Assembly: GCF_001194135.2 (NCBI RefSeq) | Contig: NC_068981.1 | Coordinates: forward strand, 92,269,946-92,333,945 | Length of the DNA stretch: 64,000 nt | Direction of reading: 5' to 3' | Source: Octopus bimaculoides | Lineage: Eukaryota | In this document: one piece after another, positions 11,592 through 36,938 of the stretch | Layout: each line of letters opens with the position of its first letter | Numbering within the stretch: the stretch's first letter is position 1 | Notes under the pieces: model-generated | Database searches by the model: none | What the model saw: the letters and a program-made list of their open reading frames with translations, nothing else | What the model was told of the DNA's origin: nothing | Made by a program: the position numbers and the translations under genes

Positions 11592-12077
11592 TCATGCTGT
11601 TGGAGGTTGTTCTGTAGTGGCCAGTTCAATCTCATTTGTACGCAGTCGTGGATCATAGACTGCTGGATTACGTAAGCGTTTGTAGACACAATAAACGCAT
11701 ATGGAAAATGAAACGACTCCCAGAGATACTGCAAGGATACCTACAATGTAGGAATGATTAGGTTTTGTATCAGGAACATTAGGAGTTGTCGGGTAAGCTG
11801 AAGTTCCAATTTCTGAGGTAAAATTGGTGTTGTCAGACATGGTGGAATCATTTGGAGAAACACGTTCAATTGCTGGATCATTTGTCACACTCGGTGAATT
11901 CAAAACCGACCGCTTGAAAATACTCGCCTCTCCTTTCGATATATGAGGTTTCATATCAGTCACTTCCAGGGTAGTATTATTATCAAAAGAGTAGTATTCA
12001 TGTCCTCTGGATGTCAAGTTTCCAAAAACGAGACCCACAAGTAAGAGTTGAAACATAGTTAAAGCGAACGAAGCCAT
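11592..12077 (-). CDS. Novel 161-aa type-I membrane protein (paralogue 1): signal-like N-terminus, KR|SVLN module, S/T/P stalk, TM helix, short tail
   Basis: MASFALTMFQLLLVG; FKRSVLNSPSVTNDPAIERVSPND; TM IVGILAVSLGVVSFSICVYCVY followed by KRLR; homologous to 36135-36938. ATG 12077 chosen from the paralogue alignment. Confidence 0.85.
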   Translation of the reverse strand: MASFALTMFQLLLVGLVFGNLTSRGHEYYSFDNNTTLEVTDMKPHISKGEASIFKRSVLNSPSVTNDPAIERVSPNDSTMSDNTNFTSEIGTSAYPTTPNVPDTKPNHSYIVGILAVSLGVVSFSICVYCVYKRLRNPAVYDPRLRTNEIELATTEQPPTA

Positions 12078-12302
12078 TGCGATAAGTATCTTGGCGGATT
12101 TGGTGATATTTCTACTGATTTGGTGATATTGTTGGCTGATTTGGTAAAAGTTACCGCTTCTATTTCGTATATATATAGGTGTGTTTTGGGCTATGCCACT
12201 TTGAAAAGAAATTGCGTTTACAGTACATCCTTTGAAAAGTAGGCTGTCCTTACATATAAAATAATAGAATTGACCTCTATTTTCGTTAGTATCTATACTA
12301 TA

Positions 12303-12840
12303 GAAAAAAGAATGAGGATCGAAGAAAAGAAAAGCAGAGACAAAGGGAAAAAAAGTTACAATGGAAAAAGAAAGTGAGGAGGTTCGAATTCTGGAACCAG
12401 AATGAACAGGAAGGAAAAACATGAGAACGAGAGAGAGGAAGCTTAATGAGTAGAGGGAGAAAAACATAATAAGAGCTAAACTAAATTACGAGACGTTCAA
12501 ACCAGAGGAAAGAGCGGTACTAGTGGAGGAAAAAAGAAAAGACGGGTTGATCGAAATATTAGGAGCAAAGATAACACCTACTGGAATATATGTAAAATAC
12601 GACAGTTTACCAAACGTGATGCAAGTCGAGAAAATAATAGAATATAACGGATAAAGAGACAGATAATTAATAGTATAATCAGAACAGTAAAATAAAACTG
12701 CGACCTTCGGGAGGACCGTAAACCATTACATCCCTTCTTCATTTCATAATTCATCATTCGTTTTATGTACCCCACGTTTTGTGTTGTCTGCCCTTGAAGT
12801 GTCCCCCTCGATGTTACAGCCGTAGTGCTTAATAAAGAAA
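12303..12840 (+). mobile_element. retroposed insert with a Tx1-family-like 3' tail and a 17-bp TSD
   Basis: ttagtatctatactata at 12286-12302 and 12841-12857; ends ...gtcccc.tcgatgttacagccgtagtgcttaataaagaaa, similar to the tails at 13017-13045 and about 19230. Confidence 0.7.
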
Positions 12841-13016
12841 TTAGTATCTATACTATAATGGAGAAAGCTGCTTATTAATTAGGTATGAACAATTACTAGA
12901 AGTTCTCAAGAGAAAGCAATTATTAAAGGGTTGACCGTCTTCAGGCCTTGTGCTTATAGTAGAAATTTAAAGGGTTGGCCATCTGGAAATATGTTTATAA
13001 ATCCATGCTCTAAGAA

Positions 13017-34626: not shown

Positions 34627-35025
34627 GATAAAATAACAAAGTCTGCTTTAAGCAATGTAAAACTAAATAGGAAATATTCAATTGTCACTAATTGTGACTG
34701 ACGTTGCAGGGGAGCACCTACATTGTTAGAATTAAAAATCGAAAGCATTTCCTGCCTGAAAGAAGCACATGTCAATGCAGTGATAGGAGAGATAAGCATC
34801 CCACAGCGAGCGAGATCATTGTACTAGTCTAGTTTCGGTTTGTAGCAAAAGCTCATTAGTGATGACTACTCCGTTGCTGTATAATTAGGCGAAATGCTAA
34901 CAGTCACTATATAGTATTTACCATATGAATAAGTGTATTATATATATATGGGAGAATTTACGAAAAAAACAACAGACGAAGACAGGTGGTGTAAACAATT
35001 TAACGCTCGATATATATACATACAT

Positions 35026-35062
<37 letters not shown>

Positions 35063-36134
35063 AACAAAGAGTACACTAAATGAGATGAGTACGTTTTCCT
35101 TTATAGTCGATGACTTCGCCATAATAAGCATATCCATCACATCCAGCATTCGTTTATGTACGAAAGAATCAATCCTGATAATACTGTTTCAGTCTTCACA
35201 AAGTTTGGATTAGCTGATATCCTTAAACTGTTTGCTGTATTAGGCTTCATCTTTGCTTTTAGATCTTAAGCAATGAGGGACTCCTCATCTACTGTTTGAG
35301 AAGACAATCCAATTCATAATATATCGCACATATATCCATATATTTTAGGTAAGTATGTGTGTGGCGTGAACGTACTTATCCAACTCTATTTCTCGTCGTC
35401 TTATATATGGATATTCTTCTGAGAAGCAATGGGTTATTTCCCCGTTGTTTATCACATGTTGTTTGGCATAATATAGAATTTTACGCTGGTCTCATCTAAA
35501 CAACTACATCATTCAGATTAGGGCATACAGGTGTTTAGATAGGTAACGCGTGTATCGTTTGAAAATGCTTAACTATGTCAATATATACGATCGGCACTGA
35601 AGTTCATTAACTTACAGCTTTTGTAAAGCTTATTACCAAATAAGCTATATGAATTTGCTAATGGTATTTGAAGTGTGACTAAACCCATTAATTCTTTAGT
35701 AAAGGGAAATATAATGCATTTTGATGTACCTTAACCTTCTTTCTTTTAACAGGCATAATATTTATATGCTTAGAACTTTATTTCCGAAATAAATTTTTTC
35801 TCATAAAGGAAATGAAATAATTTAAACTAGGAGTCGAAACCGTGACAAATATGCCGTTTAATTTGTACATAAATGTATCGCTCCTGAGTCGTTACATATT
35901 GTCAACGTGTATTAGTTTTTGTGTTACTAGAATTGTTATTGGACAATTCTATTATTTCATATTTATTTCACATTTTGACAAACGATCAATTATATTATTT
36001 CATATACAAATATTTCGAATGTTCAATTATTTAAATTGGAAAATTTATATAATCATGCATCTGTCTATTAAATAGCGTATAGAAATTGATTTATGGTTCG
36101 AAGGAAAAGGTTTCCCCCCAACATATTTCACGCT

Positions 36135-36938
36135 ATGAGTATATTTGCTTTCGTCCTTTTCGTTCAGTATTTACTTGTGGGGTGTAACTTTTTGAAAATA
36201 TTTCCAGAACTAAATACCTCCAAAATAGGTGTTTATGGGAGACAACTTAAAATACTTTCCTCGGGGAAAAATCAATCGACAGTTGGAGACTTAAATTATA
36301 GAGGACCTCAGCATCGCGATGTTCATATTAATCTGAAGCAGAATTGCTTGAAGAGATGCATGTTTGCCGATTTAAGACACACACATTTGACATGTATTTC
36401 TAAAAGATGTATCCTCTGCATACTGGTTAGCAGTACGCCAGCGTATACTTCCTTTGTCACTCCACAGAAATTAAAAAAGGGGACTCCCGTAAATAATTCT
36501 AACCATCGATATAAAAGTAATCAGAATTCACTACGAAGATTCGAGCAGAAATTTGCTATGGCAAAATATGTAGCGGAATATAAATTGAAACGAGAGACCA
36601 AGATTTTAAAGCGATCAGTCCTGAATACACAGATGGTGAAAAATTATCCAGTTATTGAATACGTTTCTGCGAATGCTCCCTTAATGCGTATGCAGACAAC
36701 TTTAACATCGGGAAATGAAAGCACTGCAACAACTAGAGATTATCCAATATCTTCCAGGGTTGCTCCATCATCTAAACCTCCCGACCTCCCAGCTACCATT
36801 GCGGTATCTATAGGACTGTTCGTATTTGGTGCTTGTATTGTGTGCTTGTATATTTGTATTAAATATAGAGGGAATCCTGATGAACAACGCACAGATGATA
36901 TTCAGCTAGTCCGTCTGAATAGTCTTCCAAATGACTGA
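36135..36938 (+). CDS. Novel 267-aa type-I membrane protein (paralogue 2; 281 aa if ATG 36093 is used) with an extra Cys-rich/basic segment before KR|SVLN
   Basis: MSIFAFVLFVQYLLVG; CLKRC..C..RCILC; KLKRETKILKRSVLNTQMVKNYPVIEYVSAN; TM LPATIAVSIGLFVFGACIVCLYICI then KYR; intact 804-bp ORF in AT-rich DNA; homologous to 11592-12077. Confidence 0.88.
   Translation: MSIFAFVLFVQYLLVGCNFLKIFPELNTSKIGVYGRQLKILSSGKNQSTVGDLNYRGPQHRDVHINLKQNCLKRCMFADLRHTHLTCISKRCILCILVSSTPAYTSFVTPQKLKKGTPVNNSNHRYKSNQNSLRRFEQKFAMAKYVAEYKLKRETKILKRSVLNTQMVKNYPVIEYVSANAPLMRMQTTLTSGNESTATTRDYPISSRVAPSSKPPDLPATIAVSIGLFVFGACIVCLYICIKYRGNPDEQRTDDIQLVRLNSLPND

What the first reader, a model, noticed from the sequence alone, without database searches (positions are those of the whole stretch)
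11592..36938. Head-to-head pair of unrecognised paralogous membrane proproteins sharing a conserved post-dibasic module
Seen: the only two clean host ORFs align at four places. N-terminus: MASFALTMFQLLLVG / MSIFAFVLFVQYLLVG. Core: IFKRSVLNSPSVTNDPAIERVSPNDSTMSDNTNFTS / ILKRSVLNTQMVKNYPVIEYVSANAPLMRMQTTLTS. TM: AVSLGVVSFSICVYCVY / AVSIGLFVFGACIVCLY. Tail: RNP..RTNEIELA / GNP..RTDDIQLV. Both ORFs are intact while every TE around them is riddled with stops, which points to purifying selection. Known: KR is the usual prohormone-convertase site in secretory precursors. Inference: a possibly lineage-restricted family of membrane-anchored precursors. Cleavage would release a variable N-terminal peptide and expose a conserved SVLN-starting neo-N-terminus on a glycosylated stalk, as in tethered ligands or protease-activated surface proteins. 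I recognise no named family.
Basis: partly seen in the sequence, partly recalled or inferred. Interest (0 to 1): 0.82.

Follow-up and report, generated by a model that had tools for sequence, protein, structure and literature searches.

The report
Fast-evolving octopus membrane glycoprotein gene pair
The two open reading frames are real paralogous single-exon genes of a small family so far found only in Octopus genomes. They encode short, probably disordered, sugar-coated single-pass membrane proteins that evolve almost as fast as the surrounding non-coding DNA, and the proposed protease cleavage remains an untested idea based on one short motif.

Summary
ORFs 11592-12467(-) and 36093-36938(+) are the two longest in the window. 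Neither contains an assembly gap, and their C-terminal 117 aa align at 36% identity (E=2e-13).

- **Coding sequences.** They start at the signal-peptide Met: 12077-11592(-), 161 aa, and 36135-36938(+), 267 aa.
- **Relatives.** HMMER against 1.84 billion proteins found three real relatives:
  - O. sinensis LOC115219683 (uncharacterized);
  - an O. vulgaris hypothetical protein;
  - one unnamed genomic contig.
  
  There was no Pfam or PDB match, and the AlphaFold model was low-confidence.
- **ORF integrity.** Full-length ORFs are intact in all three other genomes. All 6 CDS indels are multiples of 3, against 9/43 in the flanks (p=4e-4), and there are no stops.
- **Weak constraint.** dN/dS is 0.59-0.90 and the CDS is no more conserved than its flanks. 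Selection keeps the frame, the hydrophobic ends and a few motifs, and little else.
- **Motif.** I-[FL]-K-R-S is invariant in 5/5, with synonymous codon changes. It fits a convertase site (KR|S), but also the site-1-protease motif (RSVL|, as in SREBP2). Cleavage is inference only.
- **Orientation.** In O. vulgaris/O. sinensis the genes are tandem on one strand. The window's block 7558-23683 is inverted, and its junctions lie in gap-bearing DNA.

Interest is modest.

The parts
11592..12077 (-). Paralogue 1 coding sequence (161 aa + stop), single exon: MASFALT...EQPPTA
   Evidence: ORF. Start fixed at the signal-peptide Met by comparison with O. vulgaris L003 9776-10378 and Logan L001 251-835, where a stop lies just upstream. 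No N run inside.
12078..12467 (-). Upstream, pyrimidine-rich extension of the mechanical ORF. It is non-coding (5' UTR/promoter region).
   Evidence: The homologous O. vulgaris DNA is 81% identical but in a different frame (frame +3 vs +2) and is separated by stops.
12021..12077 (-). Paralogue 1 signal-peptide-like hydrophobic N-terminus (aa 1-19)
   Evidence: Kyte-Doolittle 19-residue mean 1.97. Conserved M-x-x-F-A-x-x-x-F-Q-x-L-x-V pattern across 5 sequences. No SignalP run was possible.
11814..11921 (-). Paralogue 1 conserved core module IFKRSVLNSPSVTNDPAIERVSPNDSTMSDNTNFTS. The KRSVLN hexapeptide lies at 11898-11915.
   Evidence: K-R-S is invariant in 5/5, with synonymous changes at the R, S and L codons.
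11682..11747 (-). Paralogue 1 transmembrane helix IVGILAVSLGVVSFSICVYCVY
   Evidence: KD19 peak 2.35. Hydrophobic segment conserved in all five members.
11592..11681 (-). Paralogue 1 cytoplasmic tail KRLRNPAVYDPRLRTNEIELATTEQPPTA + stop
   Evidence: Basic residues follow the TM. The R-[TN]-[ND]-x-[IM]-[EQ]-L motif is conserved in 5/5.
36135..36938 (+). Paralogue 2 coding sequence (267 aa + stop), single exon: MSIFAF...SLPND
   Evidence: ORF. The O. sinensis orthologue L002 9776-10573 is intact over its full length, 76% aa identity, with the same stop position. The upstream ATG at 36093 is not conserved in O. sinensis.
36135..36194 (+). Paralogue 2 signal-peptide-like N-terminus (aa 1-20)
   Evidence: KD19 peak 2.02; AF2 helix 2-22 with pLDDT about 60.
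36603..36710 (+). Paralogue 2 conserved core module ILKRSVLNTQMVKNYPVIEYVSANAPLMRMQTTLTS. KRSVLN lies at 36609-36626.
36798..36860 (+). Paralogue 2 transmembrane helix IAVSIGLFVFGACIVCLYICI
   Evidence: KD19 peak 2.64; AF2 helix 218-245, pLDDT 60-68.
36861..36938 (+). Paralogue 2 cytoplasmic tail KYRGNPDEQRTDDIQLVRLNSLPND + stop
12253..12273 (-). Shared upstream element TCAATTCTATTATTTTATATG, about 180 nt 5' of the paralogue 1 ATG (candidate core-promoter/TATA-like element)
   Evidence: Aligned in both paralogues and in the O. vulgaris and O. sinensis orthologues; also picked up by tblastn as 'GQFYYFI'. The function is inferred.
35943..36006 (+). Two copies of the same upstream element (35943-35962 and 35986-36006), 130-190 nt 5' of the paralogue 2 ATG
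7558..23683 (.). Block holding paralogue 1. It is inverted relative to the O. vulgaris/O. sinensis arrangement.
   Evidence: Colinear on the minus strand with L003 15790->1, while 30559-52607 is colinear on the plus strand with L003/L002. L002 1-3685 = L003 20632-24304 at 98.4% identity.

Best explanation
The window (an Octopus genome that is neither O. sinensis nor O. vulgaris) carries two old paralogues of a small, taxonomically restricted, intronless-CDS gene family.

Each gene encodes a short type I membrane protein with this layout:
- a cleavable-looking signal peptide;
- an N-terminal ectodomain of very variable length (about 35 to 140 aa);
- an invariant I-[FL]-K-R-S-[VIA]-[LF] motif heading a roughly 36-aa semi-conserved segment;
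- an N-glycosylation-sequon-bearing, Ser/Thr/Pro-rich (mucin-like, probably disordered) stalk;
- one Cys-containing TM helix;
- a 25-30 aa cytoplasmic tail with a conserved R-T-[ND]-x-I-x-L motif.

**Shown.** Paralogy and orthologues in three other genomes. Selection has kept the reading frames open. Amino-acid sequence is otherwise almost free to drift (omega 0.6-0.9).

**Inferred.** The protein works through short linear motifs plus membrane anchoring, not through a folded domain. The invariant KRS[VI]L motif is most likely a lumenal endoproteolytic processing site. The protease would be either a proprotein convertase cutting KR|S or site-1 protease cutting RS[VI]L|N. Cleavage would separate the variable N-terminal part from the membrane-bound stalk.

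The annotated orthologue models use GT-AG introns whose donors lie at the start of the TM-coding stretch. TM-less secreted isoforms are therefore possible, but untested.
For: **Paralogy**
- BLASTP E=2e-13 over 117 aa.
- The N-terminal part is bridged via O. vulgaris, E=1.5e-9.
- A shared upstream DNA element sits at similar spacing in both genes.

**Family membership**
- hmmsearch of 1.84e9 representatives returns P0001 (3e-27), P0002 (7e-26) and P0003 (1e-23).
- These are a Logan genomic contig, O. sinensis XP_029645722.1 and O. vulgaris CAI9715547.1.
- The loci are syntenic with the window at 77-91% nucleotide identity.

**Frame maintenance**
- Full-length ORFs are intact in L001, L002 and L003.
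- CDS indels are 6/6 multiples of three, against 9/43 in flanks. Fisher p=3.6e-4.
- Expected frameshifting indels are 5.9 and 6.6, observed 0, giving P=0.003 and 0.001.
- P(no new stop | neutral) is 0.028, 0.054 and 0.014.

**Architecture and motif**
- All five members have two hydrophobic peaks, sequons and an S/T/P fraction of 0.29-0.45.
- The AF2 model has only the signal-peptide and TM helices above pLDDT 60. The rest is below 50, consistent with disorder.
- KRS is invariant with R = CGG/AGG/CGA and S = TCG/TCA, so conservation is at protein level.
- RSVL is the SREBP2 S1P site and the S1P motif is R-X-(L/I/V)-(L/K) (PMC12067269). Four of five members fit it.
Against: - Substitutions carry no coding signature. 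Differences per codon position are 0.121/0.106/0.102 for ORF2 vs O. sinensis.
- dN/dS is 0.90 there (p=0.68 against neutrality).
- CDS identity is 89.6% against flanks of 90.6% and 89.5%. ORF1's CDS (82.5%) is less conserved than its 3' flank (86.1%).
- There is no direct expression evidence. The window's own proteins are absent from the 15-billion-protein collection in ten start-codon variants.
- Both public gene models omit the signal peptide and the TM.
- Cleavage is purely motif-based. P4 is Ile, so it is not a furin R-X-[KR]-R site. The Logan member has RSAF, which does not fit the S1P motif.
- Dibasic pairs are common in this AT-rich, Lys/Arg-rich coding sequence.
- Only five sequences are known, so the conservation statistics are thin.
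Confidence: 0.7

Rival explanations
1. The ORFs are not functional genes. They are neutrally evolving sequence (dead genes or proto-genes) that happens still to be open in the sampled species.
For: - dN/dS is 0.90 for ORF2, with substitutions uniform across codon positions.
- The CDS is no better conserved than its flanks.
- No fold is predicted and there is no homologue outside Octopus.
- No product of the window's ORFs is on record.
Against: - Five independent ORFs (two paralogues; three or four species) are all open.
- All 6 CDS indels are in frame, against 21% of flank indels (p=3.6e-4).
- About 6 frameshifts were expected per gene and none was seen.
- P(no stop) is 0.01-0.05 per pair. Even after halving the divergence to allow for ascertainment in the window, the joint probability per gene is about 0.01.
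- The paralogues keep signal-peptide, TM and motif similarity at synonymous divergence of about 0.9.
- KRS is kept through synonymous codon changes.
Confidence: 0.1
2. The ORFs are first exons of spliced genes, as in the public models (XP_029645722.1, CAI9715547.1). The real products would be soluble proteins lacking the TM and tail, and the downstream part of each ORF would be intron read-through.
For: - Two independent annotation pipelines give models with canonical GT-AG introns of 3.0 and 3.9 kb.
- The introns leave the ORF at the beginning of the TM-coding stretch.
- The O. sinensis donor GT and the acceptor are also present in the window.
Against: - The TM and tail are conserved between paralogues and in all orthologues, with the stop at the same place in ORF2/O. 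sinensis.
- The two donors are at different positions in the two paralogues.
- The 3' exons are not conserved as coding. The window counterpart of the O. vulgaris exon has a stop. The O. sinensis exon counterpart shifts frame through a (GA)n tract.
- Both models also miss the conserved signal peptide, so they look 5'-incomplete.
- Both isoforms may co-exist.
Confidence: 0.12
3. The ORFs derive from a transposable element or an endogenous virus (for example an envelope-like glycoprotein cleaved at a basic site).
For: - They are embedded in TE-rich DNA.
- The layout of signal peptide, basic cleavage motif and C-terminal TM superficially recalls class I viral glycoproteins.
Against: - There are only two copies in 64 kb and one per 24 kb orthologous locus, at syntenic positions.
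- There is no Pfam or TE domain.
- Only three clusters were found among 1.84e9 proteins.
- The post-motif ectodomain is about 55-60 aa of low-complexity sequence, too short for a fusion subunit.
Confidence: 0.02
4. The core module is a degenerate IPT/TIG (Ig-like) domain, as suggested by the hit to a metagenomic TIG-repeat protein.
For: P0004 gave E=3.3e-7 with 9 matched stretches. It is an IPT/TIG repeat protein. The pattern P-x-[IV]-x-x-V-S-P-N-x-[ST]...T-x-F-T resembles the first TIG strands.
Against: - One repeat against the module profile gives an hhalign probability of 16%.
- There is no TIG hit in Pfam for either ORF, even at E<=10.
- Only one of the many TIG proteins in the library was hit, so the score is a sum over repeats.
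- About 36 aa are available against 85 for a TIG domain.
- The AF2 model shows no strands.
Confidence: 0.02

Closest known systems
Octopus sinensis uncharacterized protein LOC115219683 (XP_029645722.1 / A0A6P7T638) and Octopus vulgaris hypothetical protein CAI9715547.1 (A0AA36AJ48)
   Same: They are orthologues of paralogue 2 and paralogue 1 respectively. The genomic ORFs show 76% and 71% aa identity, at syntenic loci, with the same motifs.
   Different: The database entries are truncated, spliced models lacking both the signal peptide and the TM/tail. In those genomes the two genes are tandem on one strand.
Site-1 protease (S1P/SKI-1, MBTPS1) substrates, e.g. SREBP2 (RSVL|), SPRING (RNLL|), arenavirus GPC
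   Same: A lumenal R-X-(L/I/V)-(L/K) motif is present: RSVL in three members and RSIL in one. RSVL is identical to the SREBP2 site (PMC12067269). As in SPRING and GPC, the motif sits in the ectodomain of a single-pass membrane protein.
   Different: The resemblance is a four-residue motif only, with no homology. One member has RSAF. No evidence of cleavage exists.
Proprotein/prohormone-convertase substrates (dibasic KR| sites in secretory precursors)
   Same: KR is invariant in 5/5 and is followed by Ser. Paralogue 2 and its orthologue have further conserved dibasic pairs upstream: [KR]R-C, KR-[CS] and KR-E.
   Different: P4 is Ile in all members, so the furin consensus R-X-[KR]-R is not met. 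The peptides between sites are not conserved and there is no amidation signal. A membrane anchor is atypical for neuropeptide precursors.
Small mucin-like type I membrane glycoproteins (glycophorins, podoplanin, CD43-type stalks)
   Same: The architecture matches: signal peptide, disordered S/T/P-rich sequon-bearing ectodomain, single TM and short tail. Rapid sequence evolution with conserved layout is also shared. This comparison rests on general knowledge.
   Different: There is no sequence relationship. The conserved basic/hydrophobic motif at the head of the stalk is not a feature of those families.
   Same: The idea that cleavage after Arg exposes a Ser-initiated neo-N-terminus that stays membrane-tethered.
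   Different: PARs are seven-TM GPCRs cleaved by extracellular proteases. Here there is a single TM, a 25-30 aa tail and no receptor body. The neo-N-terminus (SVLN/SILN/SAFE) is only partly conserved.

Membership tests
Unnamed Octopus family (LOC115219683 / CAI9715547-like) | Significant sequence similarity over the core-stalk-TM-tail module | tested here: met
   Profile hits at 3e-27, 7e-26 and 1e-23; tblastn against the loci gives 1e-35 to 1e-136.
Unnamed Octopus family (LOC115219683 / CAI9715547-like) | Orthologous (syntenic) genomic position | tested here: met
   Flanks are colinear at 77-91% identity for more than 15 kb on each side.
Unnamed Octopus family (LOC115219683 / CAI9715547-like) | Same architecture (signal peptide, KRS motif, TM, tail) from a single uninterrupted ORF | tested here: met
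Proprotein-convertase (furin-type) substrate | R-X-[KR]-R consensus with Arg at P4 | tested here: not met
   P4 is Ile in 5/5. A basic residue is at P5 in 4/5.
Prohormone-convertase (PC1/3, PC2) substrate | Conserved dibasic KR in the lumenal part of a secretory-pathway protein | tested here: met
   KR is invariant in 5/5, downstream of a signal-peptide-like segment. This is motif-level evidence only.
Prohormone-convertase (PC1/3, PC2) substrate | Demonstrated cleavage / released peptide | not testable with these tools
   Needs expression, inhibitor and N-terminal sequencing experiments.
Site-1 protease substrate | Lumenal R-X-(L/I/V)-(L/K) motif | tested here: inconclusive
   RSVL in three members and RSIL in one fit; RSAF in one does not. 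Motif as given in PMC12067269.
Site-1 protease substrate | PF-429242-sensitive cleavage in the Golgi | not testable with these tools
   Experimental.
IPT/TIG domain | Match to PF01833 or profile-profile similarity to a TIG repeat | tested here: not met
   No Pfam hit at E<=10; hhalign probability 16%.
Transposable-element or viral protein | TE/viral domain, or multi-copy dispersed distribution | tested here: not met
   No domain; two copies in the window and one per orthologous locus.
Protease-activated receptor | Seven-transmembrane receptor body | tested here: not met
   Only one internal TM peak plus the signal peptide.
Protein-coding gene under purifying selection | dN/dS clearly below 1 | tested here: inconclusive
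   Values are 0.90 (p=0.68), 0.59 (p=0.037), 0.66 (p=0.057) and 0.74 (p=0.12).
Protein-coding gene under purifying selection | Reading frame preserved (no stops, indels in multiples of three) | tested here: met

The most novel reading that the evidence does not exclude
An octopod-specific, possibly de novo-born family of membrane-tethered pro-proteins. Its only strongly conserved ectodomain feature would be a dual-purpose processing site (KR|S for convertases, RSVL|N for site-1 protease). Regulated cleavage, perhaps combined with alternative splicing that removes the TM, would release a rapidly diversifying N-terminal peptide and leave a conserved stub that signals. This would be a fast-evolving ligand system of the kind seen in immunity, reproduction or chemosensation.
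Probability: 0.12. Interest if true: 0.6.

Novelty: new member of a known kind. Interest (0 to 1): 0.33.

Why it matters
If real, this adds a correctly modelled pair of genes to the octopus gene set. The models have a signal peptide, a conserved processing-type motif, a TM helix and a tail. Current annotations hold only truncated 'uncharacterized' fragments of the orthologues in two other species (the window's own annotation could not be checked).

It is also a clean small example of a taxonomically restricted family in which selection visibly protects the reading frame and a few linear motifs while most residues drift at near-neutral rate. That is useful for work on orphan-gene evolution and on annotation of short intronless genes in cephalopods.

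It does not bear on any long-standing open question. The cleavage idea needs wet-lab evidence before it is worth more.

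Tried and rejected
- **Word-indexed homologue searches.** ORF1 alone gave nothing. The 5-sequence profile gave only P0002. The index evidently misses known members, so the third search was not spent.
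- **Exact look-ups of the window's proteins.** Three variants went to the look-up of encoding contigs and ten start-codon variants to the cluster table. None is on record, so no expression or annotation evidence for this species could be obtained.
- **Pfam and PDB.** No real hits. The INO80 match at E=0.013 is noise.
- **AlphaFold2 with 5 sequences.** Mean pLDDT 43.6, so no fold search was run.
- **IPT/TIG lead from P0004.** Rejected.
- **Literature.** Searches for KRSVLN, LOC115219683, SRR11869386 and the accessions returned nothing.
- **Rfam and tRNA scans of the window.** Nothing found.
- **Collagen exon.** I looked in the window for a counterpart of the collagen exon next to the Logan homologue. 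None was found.
- **Splice-acceptor idea.** I considered that TTTTCAAG|CG before the conserved core might be a splice acceptor, making KR half-intronic. I rejected it because the ORF, the signal peptide and the region between them are conserved and in frame in all orthologues.
- **Region-wise dN/dS.** Counts are too small to localise constraint. The core shows low pS as well as low pN, which remains unexplained.
- **Inversion breakpoints.** They fall in unalignable DNA and could not be resolved.

Full report

Yes. The ORF listing gives 11592-12467(-), 291 aa, and 36093-36938(+), 281 aa. In a stop-to-stop census of all six frames they are the two longest frames in the window, at 297 and 282 codons. 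The next is 177.

The program's warning about assembly gaps does not touch the ORFs. All ten N runs were located. The six in the finding's span (17646-17988, 22996-23012, 25532-26206, 29036-29235, 30206-30305, 33527-33578) all lie between the two ORFs.

BLASTP aligns the C-terminal parts at 42/117 identities, E=2e-13. tblastn of either protein against the window finds only the other one (E about 3e-11) and no third copy.

**2. Where the genes start, and the full extent of paralogy.**

A profile of the shared module was searched with HMMER against 1.84 billion representative proteins. It found three real relatives and one repeat protein:
- P0002 is Octopus sinensis 'uncharacterized protein LOC115219683'.
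- P0003 is an Octopus vulgaris 'hypothetical predicted protein'.
- P0001 comes from one Logan assembly (SRR11869386).

Their loci were fetched as L002, L003 and L001. In each locus a single uninterrupted ORF encodes the whole protein: L003 9776-10378 (200 aa, ORF1-type), L001 251-835 (194 aa, ORF1-type) and L002 9776-10573 (265 aa, ORF2-type).

All begin at the Met of the hydrophobic N-terminus, shortly after an in-frame stop or without any earlier conserved ATG. The DNA homologous to the first 130 codons of the window's ORF1 is conserved in O. vulgaris but in another frame. The real coding sequences are therefore 12077-11592(-), 161 aa, and 36135-36938(+), 267 aa.

The O. vulgaris ORF1-type protein keeps 30 residues after the signal peptide that the window's copy has lost. 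Those residues align with paralogue 2 at 45% over 62 aa, E=1.5e-9. The two genes are thus homologous from the first residue to the last (alignment A4). They also share a 20-nt upstream element, TCAATTCTATTATTT[CT]ATAT, 130-190 nt before the ATG.

**3. What the proteins look like.**

All five sequences share these features:
- exactly two strong hydrophobic peaks, the N-terminal signal-peptide-like one and a C-terminal TM (Kyte-Doolittle 19-mer 1.9-2.8);
- three to nine N-x-S/T sequons;
- a 54-63-residue segment between the KRS motif and the TM with 33-45% Ser+Thr+Pro (the script's O. sinensis figure of 130 residues and 29% started at an earlier KRS and is not comparable);
- Cys residues within the TM;
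- a 25-33-residue tail.

Invariant positions are few: I-x-K-R-S, E-x-V-x-x-N, T-x-x-T, Y-P, P, A-x-x-x-G, C-x-Y, P, R and L.

Pfam finds nothing. A profile search of PDB sequences finds nothing credible. AlphaFold2 with the five available sequences gives mean pLDDT 43.6. Only the signal peptide and TM helices reach 60-68, and residues 23-211 are below 50. This agrees with a largely disordered, mucin-like ectodomain, although the shallow alignment limits that conclusion.

The fourth HMMER hit, P0004, is a metagenomic IPT/TIG-repeat protein. Its E-value is a sum over nine repeats. One repeat against the module profile gives an hhalign probability of 16%. I treat it as chance.

**4. Are they under selection?**

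*Substitutions carry almost no coding signature (NG86):*

| Pair | dN/dS | Other measures |
|---|---|---|
| ORF2 vs O. sinensis | 0.90 | 87 differences; per-position 0.121/0.106/0.102 |
| ORF1 vs O. vulgaris | 0.59 | |
| ORF1 vs Logan contig | 0.66 | |
| O. vulgaris vs Logan contig | 0.74 | |
| The two paralogues | 0.63 | dS about 0.9 |

Only the 0.59 differs from 1 at p<0.05.

*Nucleotide identity of the CDS equals that of the flanks:*

| Gene | CDS | 5' flank | 3' flank |
|---|---|---|---|
| ORF2 | 89.6% | 90.6% | 89.5% |
| ORF1 | 82.5% | 72% | 86% |

*The reading frames, however, are clearly protected.*
- All 6 CDS indels in the two orthologous pairs are multiples of three, against 9 of 43 in the flanks. 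Fisher p=3.6e-4.
- The flank rate of frameshifting indels predicts 5.9 and 6.6 events in the two CDSs. None occurred (P=0.003 and 0.001).
- Simulated neutral substitution at the observed number and spectrum leaves the frame stop-free in only 2.8%, 5.4% and 1.4% of trials.
- If half the divergence is discounted because the window's copies were chosen for being open, the joint probability is still about 0.01 per gene, for two genes, plus the independent Logan lineage.
- The KRS motif is kept through synonymous changes: Arg CGG/AGG/CGA, Ser TCG/TCA and Leu TTG/CTG.

*Conclusion.* These are protein-coding genes in which selection maintains an open frame, two hydrophobic segments and a handful of motif residues. 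Most positions are nearly free. This pattern is typical of disordered, taxonomically restricted or surface-exposed fast-evolving proteins.

Region-wise estimates are too noisy to localise constraint. The core has low pS as well as low pN in the close pairs, which I cannot explain with these counts.

**5. How it most likely works.**

*Shown:* the architecture of a type I single-pass membrane protein entering the secretory pathway.

*Inferred:* function resides in short linear motifs. The best-conserved one, I-[FL]-K-R-S-[VIA]-[LF]-[NE]-[ST], heads the conserved half of the ectodomain and looks like an endoproteolytic site.

The same hexapeptide contains R-S-V-L. This is the very sequence at which site-1 protease cuts SREBP2, and the S1P motif is R-X-(L/I/V)-(L/K) (PMC12067269). 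Three members have RSVL, one has RSIL and one has RSAF. Either protease acts in the Golgi lumen, where this segment would be.

Either way, cleavage would detach the length-variable N-terminal part (about 35-140 aa; in paralogue 2 it is rich in further dibasic pairs and Cys). It would leave a stub of roughly 55-60 aa of glycosylated stalk, the TM and the tail.

No experiment or dataset available here tests this. I put the processing step at about 0.3, and the existence of the genes as functional coding units at about 0.7-0.75.

**6. The public gene models.**

Both annotated orthologues are two-exon models that start at an internal Met, so they have no signal peptide. They leave the ORF through a canonical GT donor at the very beginning of the TM-coding stretch, at AGT|GTTCGT in O. 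sinensis and GTAG|GTATCC in O. vulgaris. The two donors are seven codons apart in the alignment. The models end in a short exon 3-4 kb downstream.

Those terminal exons are not conserved as coding in the window. One has a stop and the other changes frame through a (GA)n tract. In contrast, the TM and tail are conserved even between paralogues.

The unspliced ORF is therefore the conserved product. If the spliced forms are real, they would be TM-less secreted isoforms. The canonical introns hint that RNA evidence exists, but I could not see it.

**7. Arrangement.**

L002 1-3685 is 98.4% identical, in the same orientation, to L003 20632-24304. The two fetched loci therefore overlap. In O. vulgaris/O. 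sinensis the ORF1-type gene lies about 20 kb upstream of the ORF2-type gene on the same strand.

Mapping the window onto that composite gives:
- 7558-23683 is colinear on the minus strand.
- 30559-52607 is colinear on the plus strand.

The block with paralogue 1 is thus inverted in this assembly.

Gaps 22996-23012 and 33527-33578 are bridged colinearly by the orthologous sequence. The segment 13624-17997 around gap 17646-17988 is a lineage-specific insertion holding a LINE fragment. The three gaps at 25532-26206, 29036-29235 and 30206-30305, and the one at 6152-6282, lie in the unalignable stretches where the orientation must switch.

A true inversion and a scaffolding error cannot be told apart here. 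'Head-to-head' should not be treated as a property of the family.

**8. Comparison with what is known, and novelty.**

By homology, the only relatives are the two uncharacterised Octopus database entries and one anonymous contig. No literature mentions them.

By architecture, the proteins belong to the generic class of small mucin-like type I membrane glycoproteins. By motif, they resemble convertase and S1P substrates. They fail the tested defining features of furin substrates, IPT/TIG domains, TE/viral proteins and PAR-type receptors.

I file this as a new, currently mis-annotated, lineage-restricted member of a known general kind. Lineage-restricted genes of this sort are common in cephalopod genomes (my own background knowledge, not checked here). 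A specialist would not be very surprised, and no open question becomes testable.

**Verdict.** Interest is 0.33.

Noticed in passing
window 7558-23683 versus 30559-52607; L003 20632-24304 = L002 1-3685: The block holding paralogue 1 is inverted relative to the chromosome-level O. vulgaris/O. sinensis arrangement, where the two genes are tandem on one strand about 20 kb apart. Both junctions fall in unalignable, gap-bearing DNA, so this is either a real inversion or a scaffolding mis-orientation.
   Followed up: partly
L001 1507-1596 (minus strand): The Logan contig with the ORF1-like gene is genomic (Nextera adapter at its end). About 670 nt downstream, on the opposite strand, it carries a collagen-like Gly-X-Y exon (GVSGRQGPPGIPGIPGKDGKDGAVGPPG) with AG/GT borders. 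No counterpart exists in the window.
   Followed up: partly
window 12253-12273(-), 35943-35962(+), 35986-36006(+): A 20-nt AT-rich element, TCAATTCTATTATTT[CT]ATAT, is shared by the upstream regions of both paralogues and their orthologues, 130-190 nt before the ATG. It is duplicated in the ORF2 lineage. It may be a core promoter element.
   Followed up: partly
window 13624-17997: A 4.4 kb segment is absent from O. vulgaris, where about 425 nt stand in its place. It contains a LINE endonuclease fragment (15107-15571, Exo_endo_phos_2) and assembly gap 17646-17988. This is a lineage-specific retroelement insertion upstream of paralogue 1.
   Followed up: partly
L002 10450/13478 and L003 10222/14138; window 36819 and about 41480, 11747 and about 9160: The public gene models of both orthologues splice out the TM and tail through canonical GT-AG introns whose donors lie at the start of the TM-coding stretch. 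The 3' exons are not conserved as coding in the window. TM-less secreted isoforms are possible.
   Followed up: partly
window 11814-11921 and 36603-36710 (core module): In the close orthologous pairs the 36-codon core has low synonymous as well as low non-synonymous divergence (pS 0.04-0.08, against 0.14-0.45 elsewhere). Counts are small and the cause is unexplained.
   Followed up: no
window 43570-43839(-), 31036-31416(+): Further degraded mobile-element pieces: a UvrD/PIF1-type helicase C-terminal fragment (Helitron-like) next to gap 42710-43361, and a second LINE endonuclease fragment.
   Followed up: partly
window 12204-12302 and L003 6322-6420: A 99-nt piece of the paralogue 1 upstream region (translating as YSIDTNEN.GQFYY.ICK) has a second, 93%-identical copy 3.2 kb further upstream in O. 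vulgaris. It is a local duplication or a small repeat.
   Followed up: no
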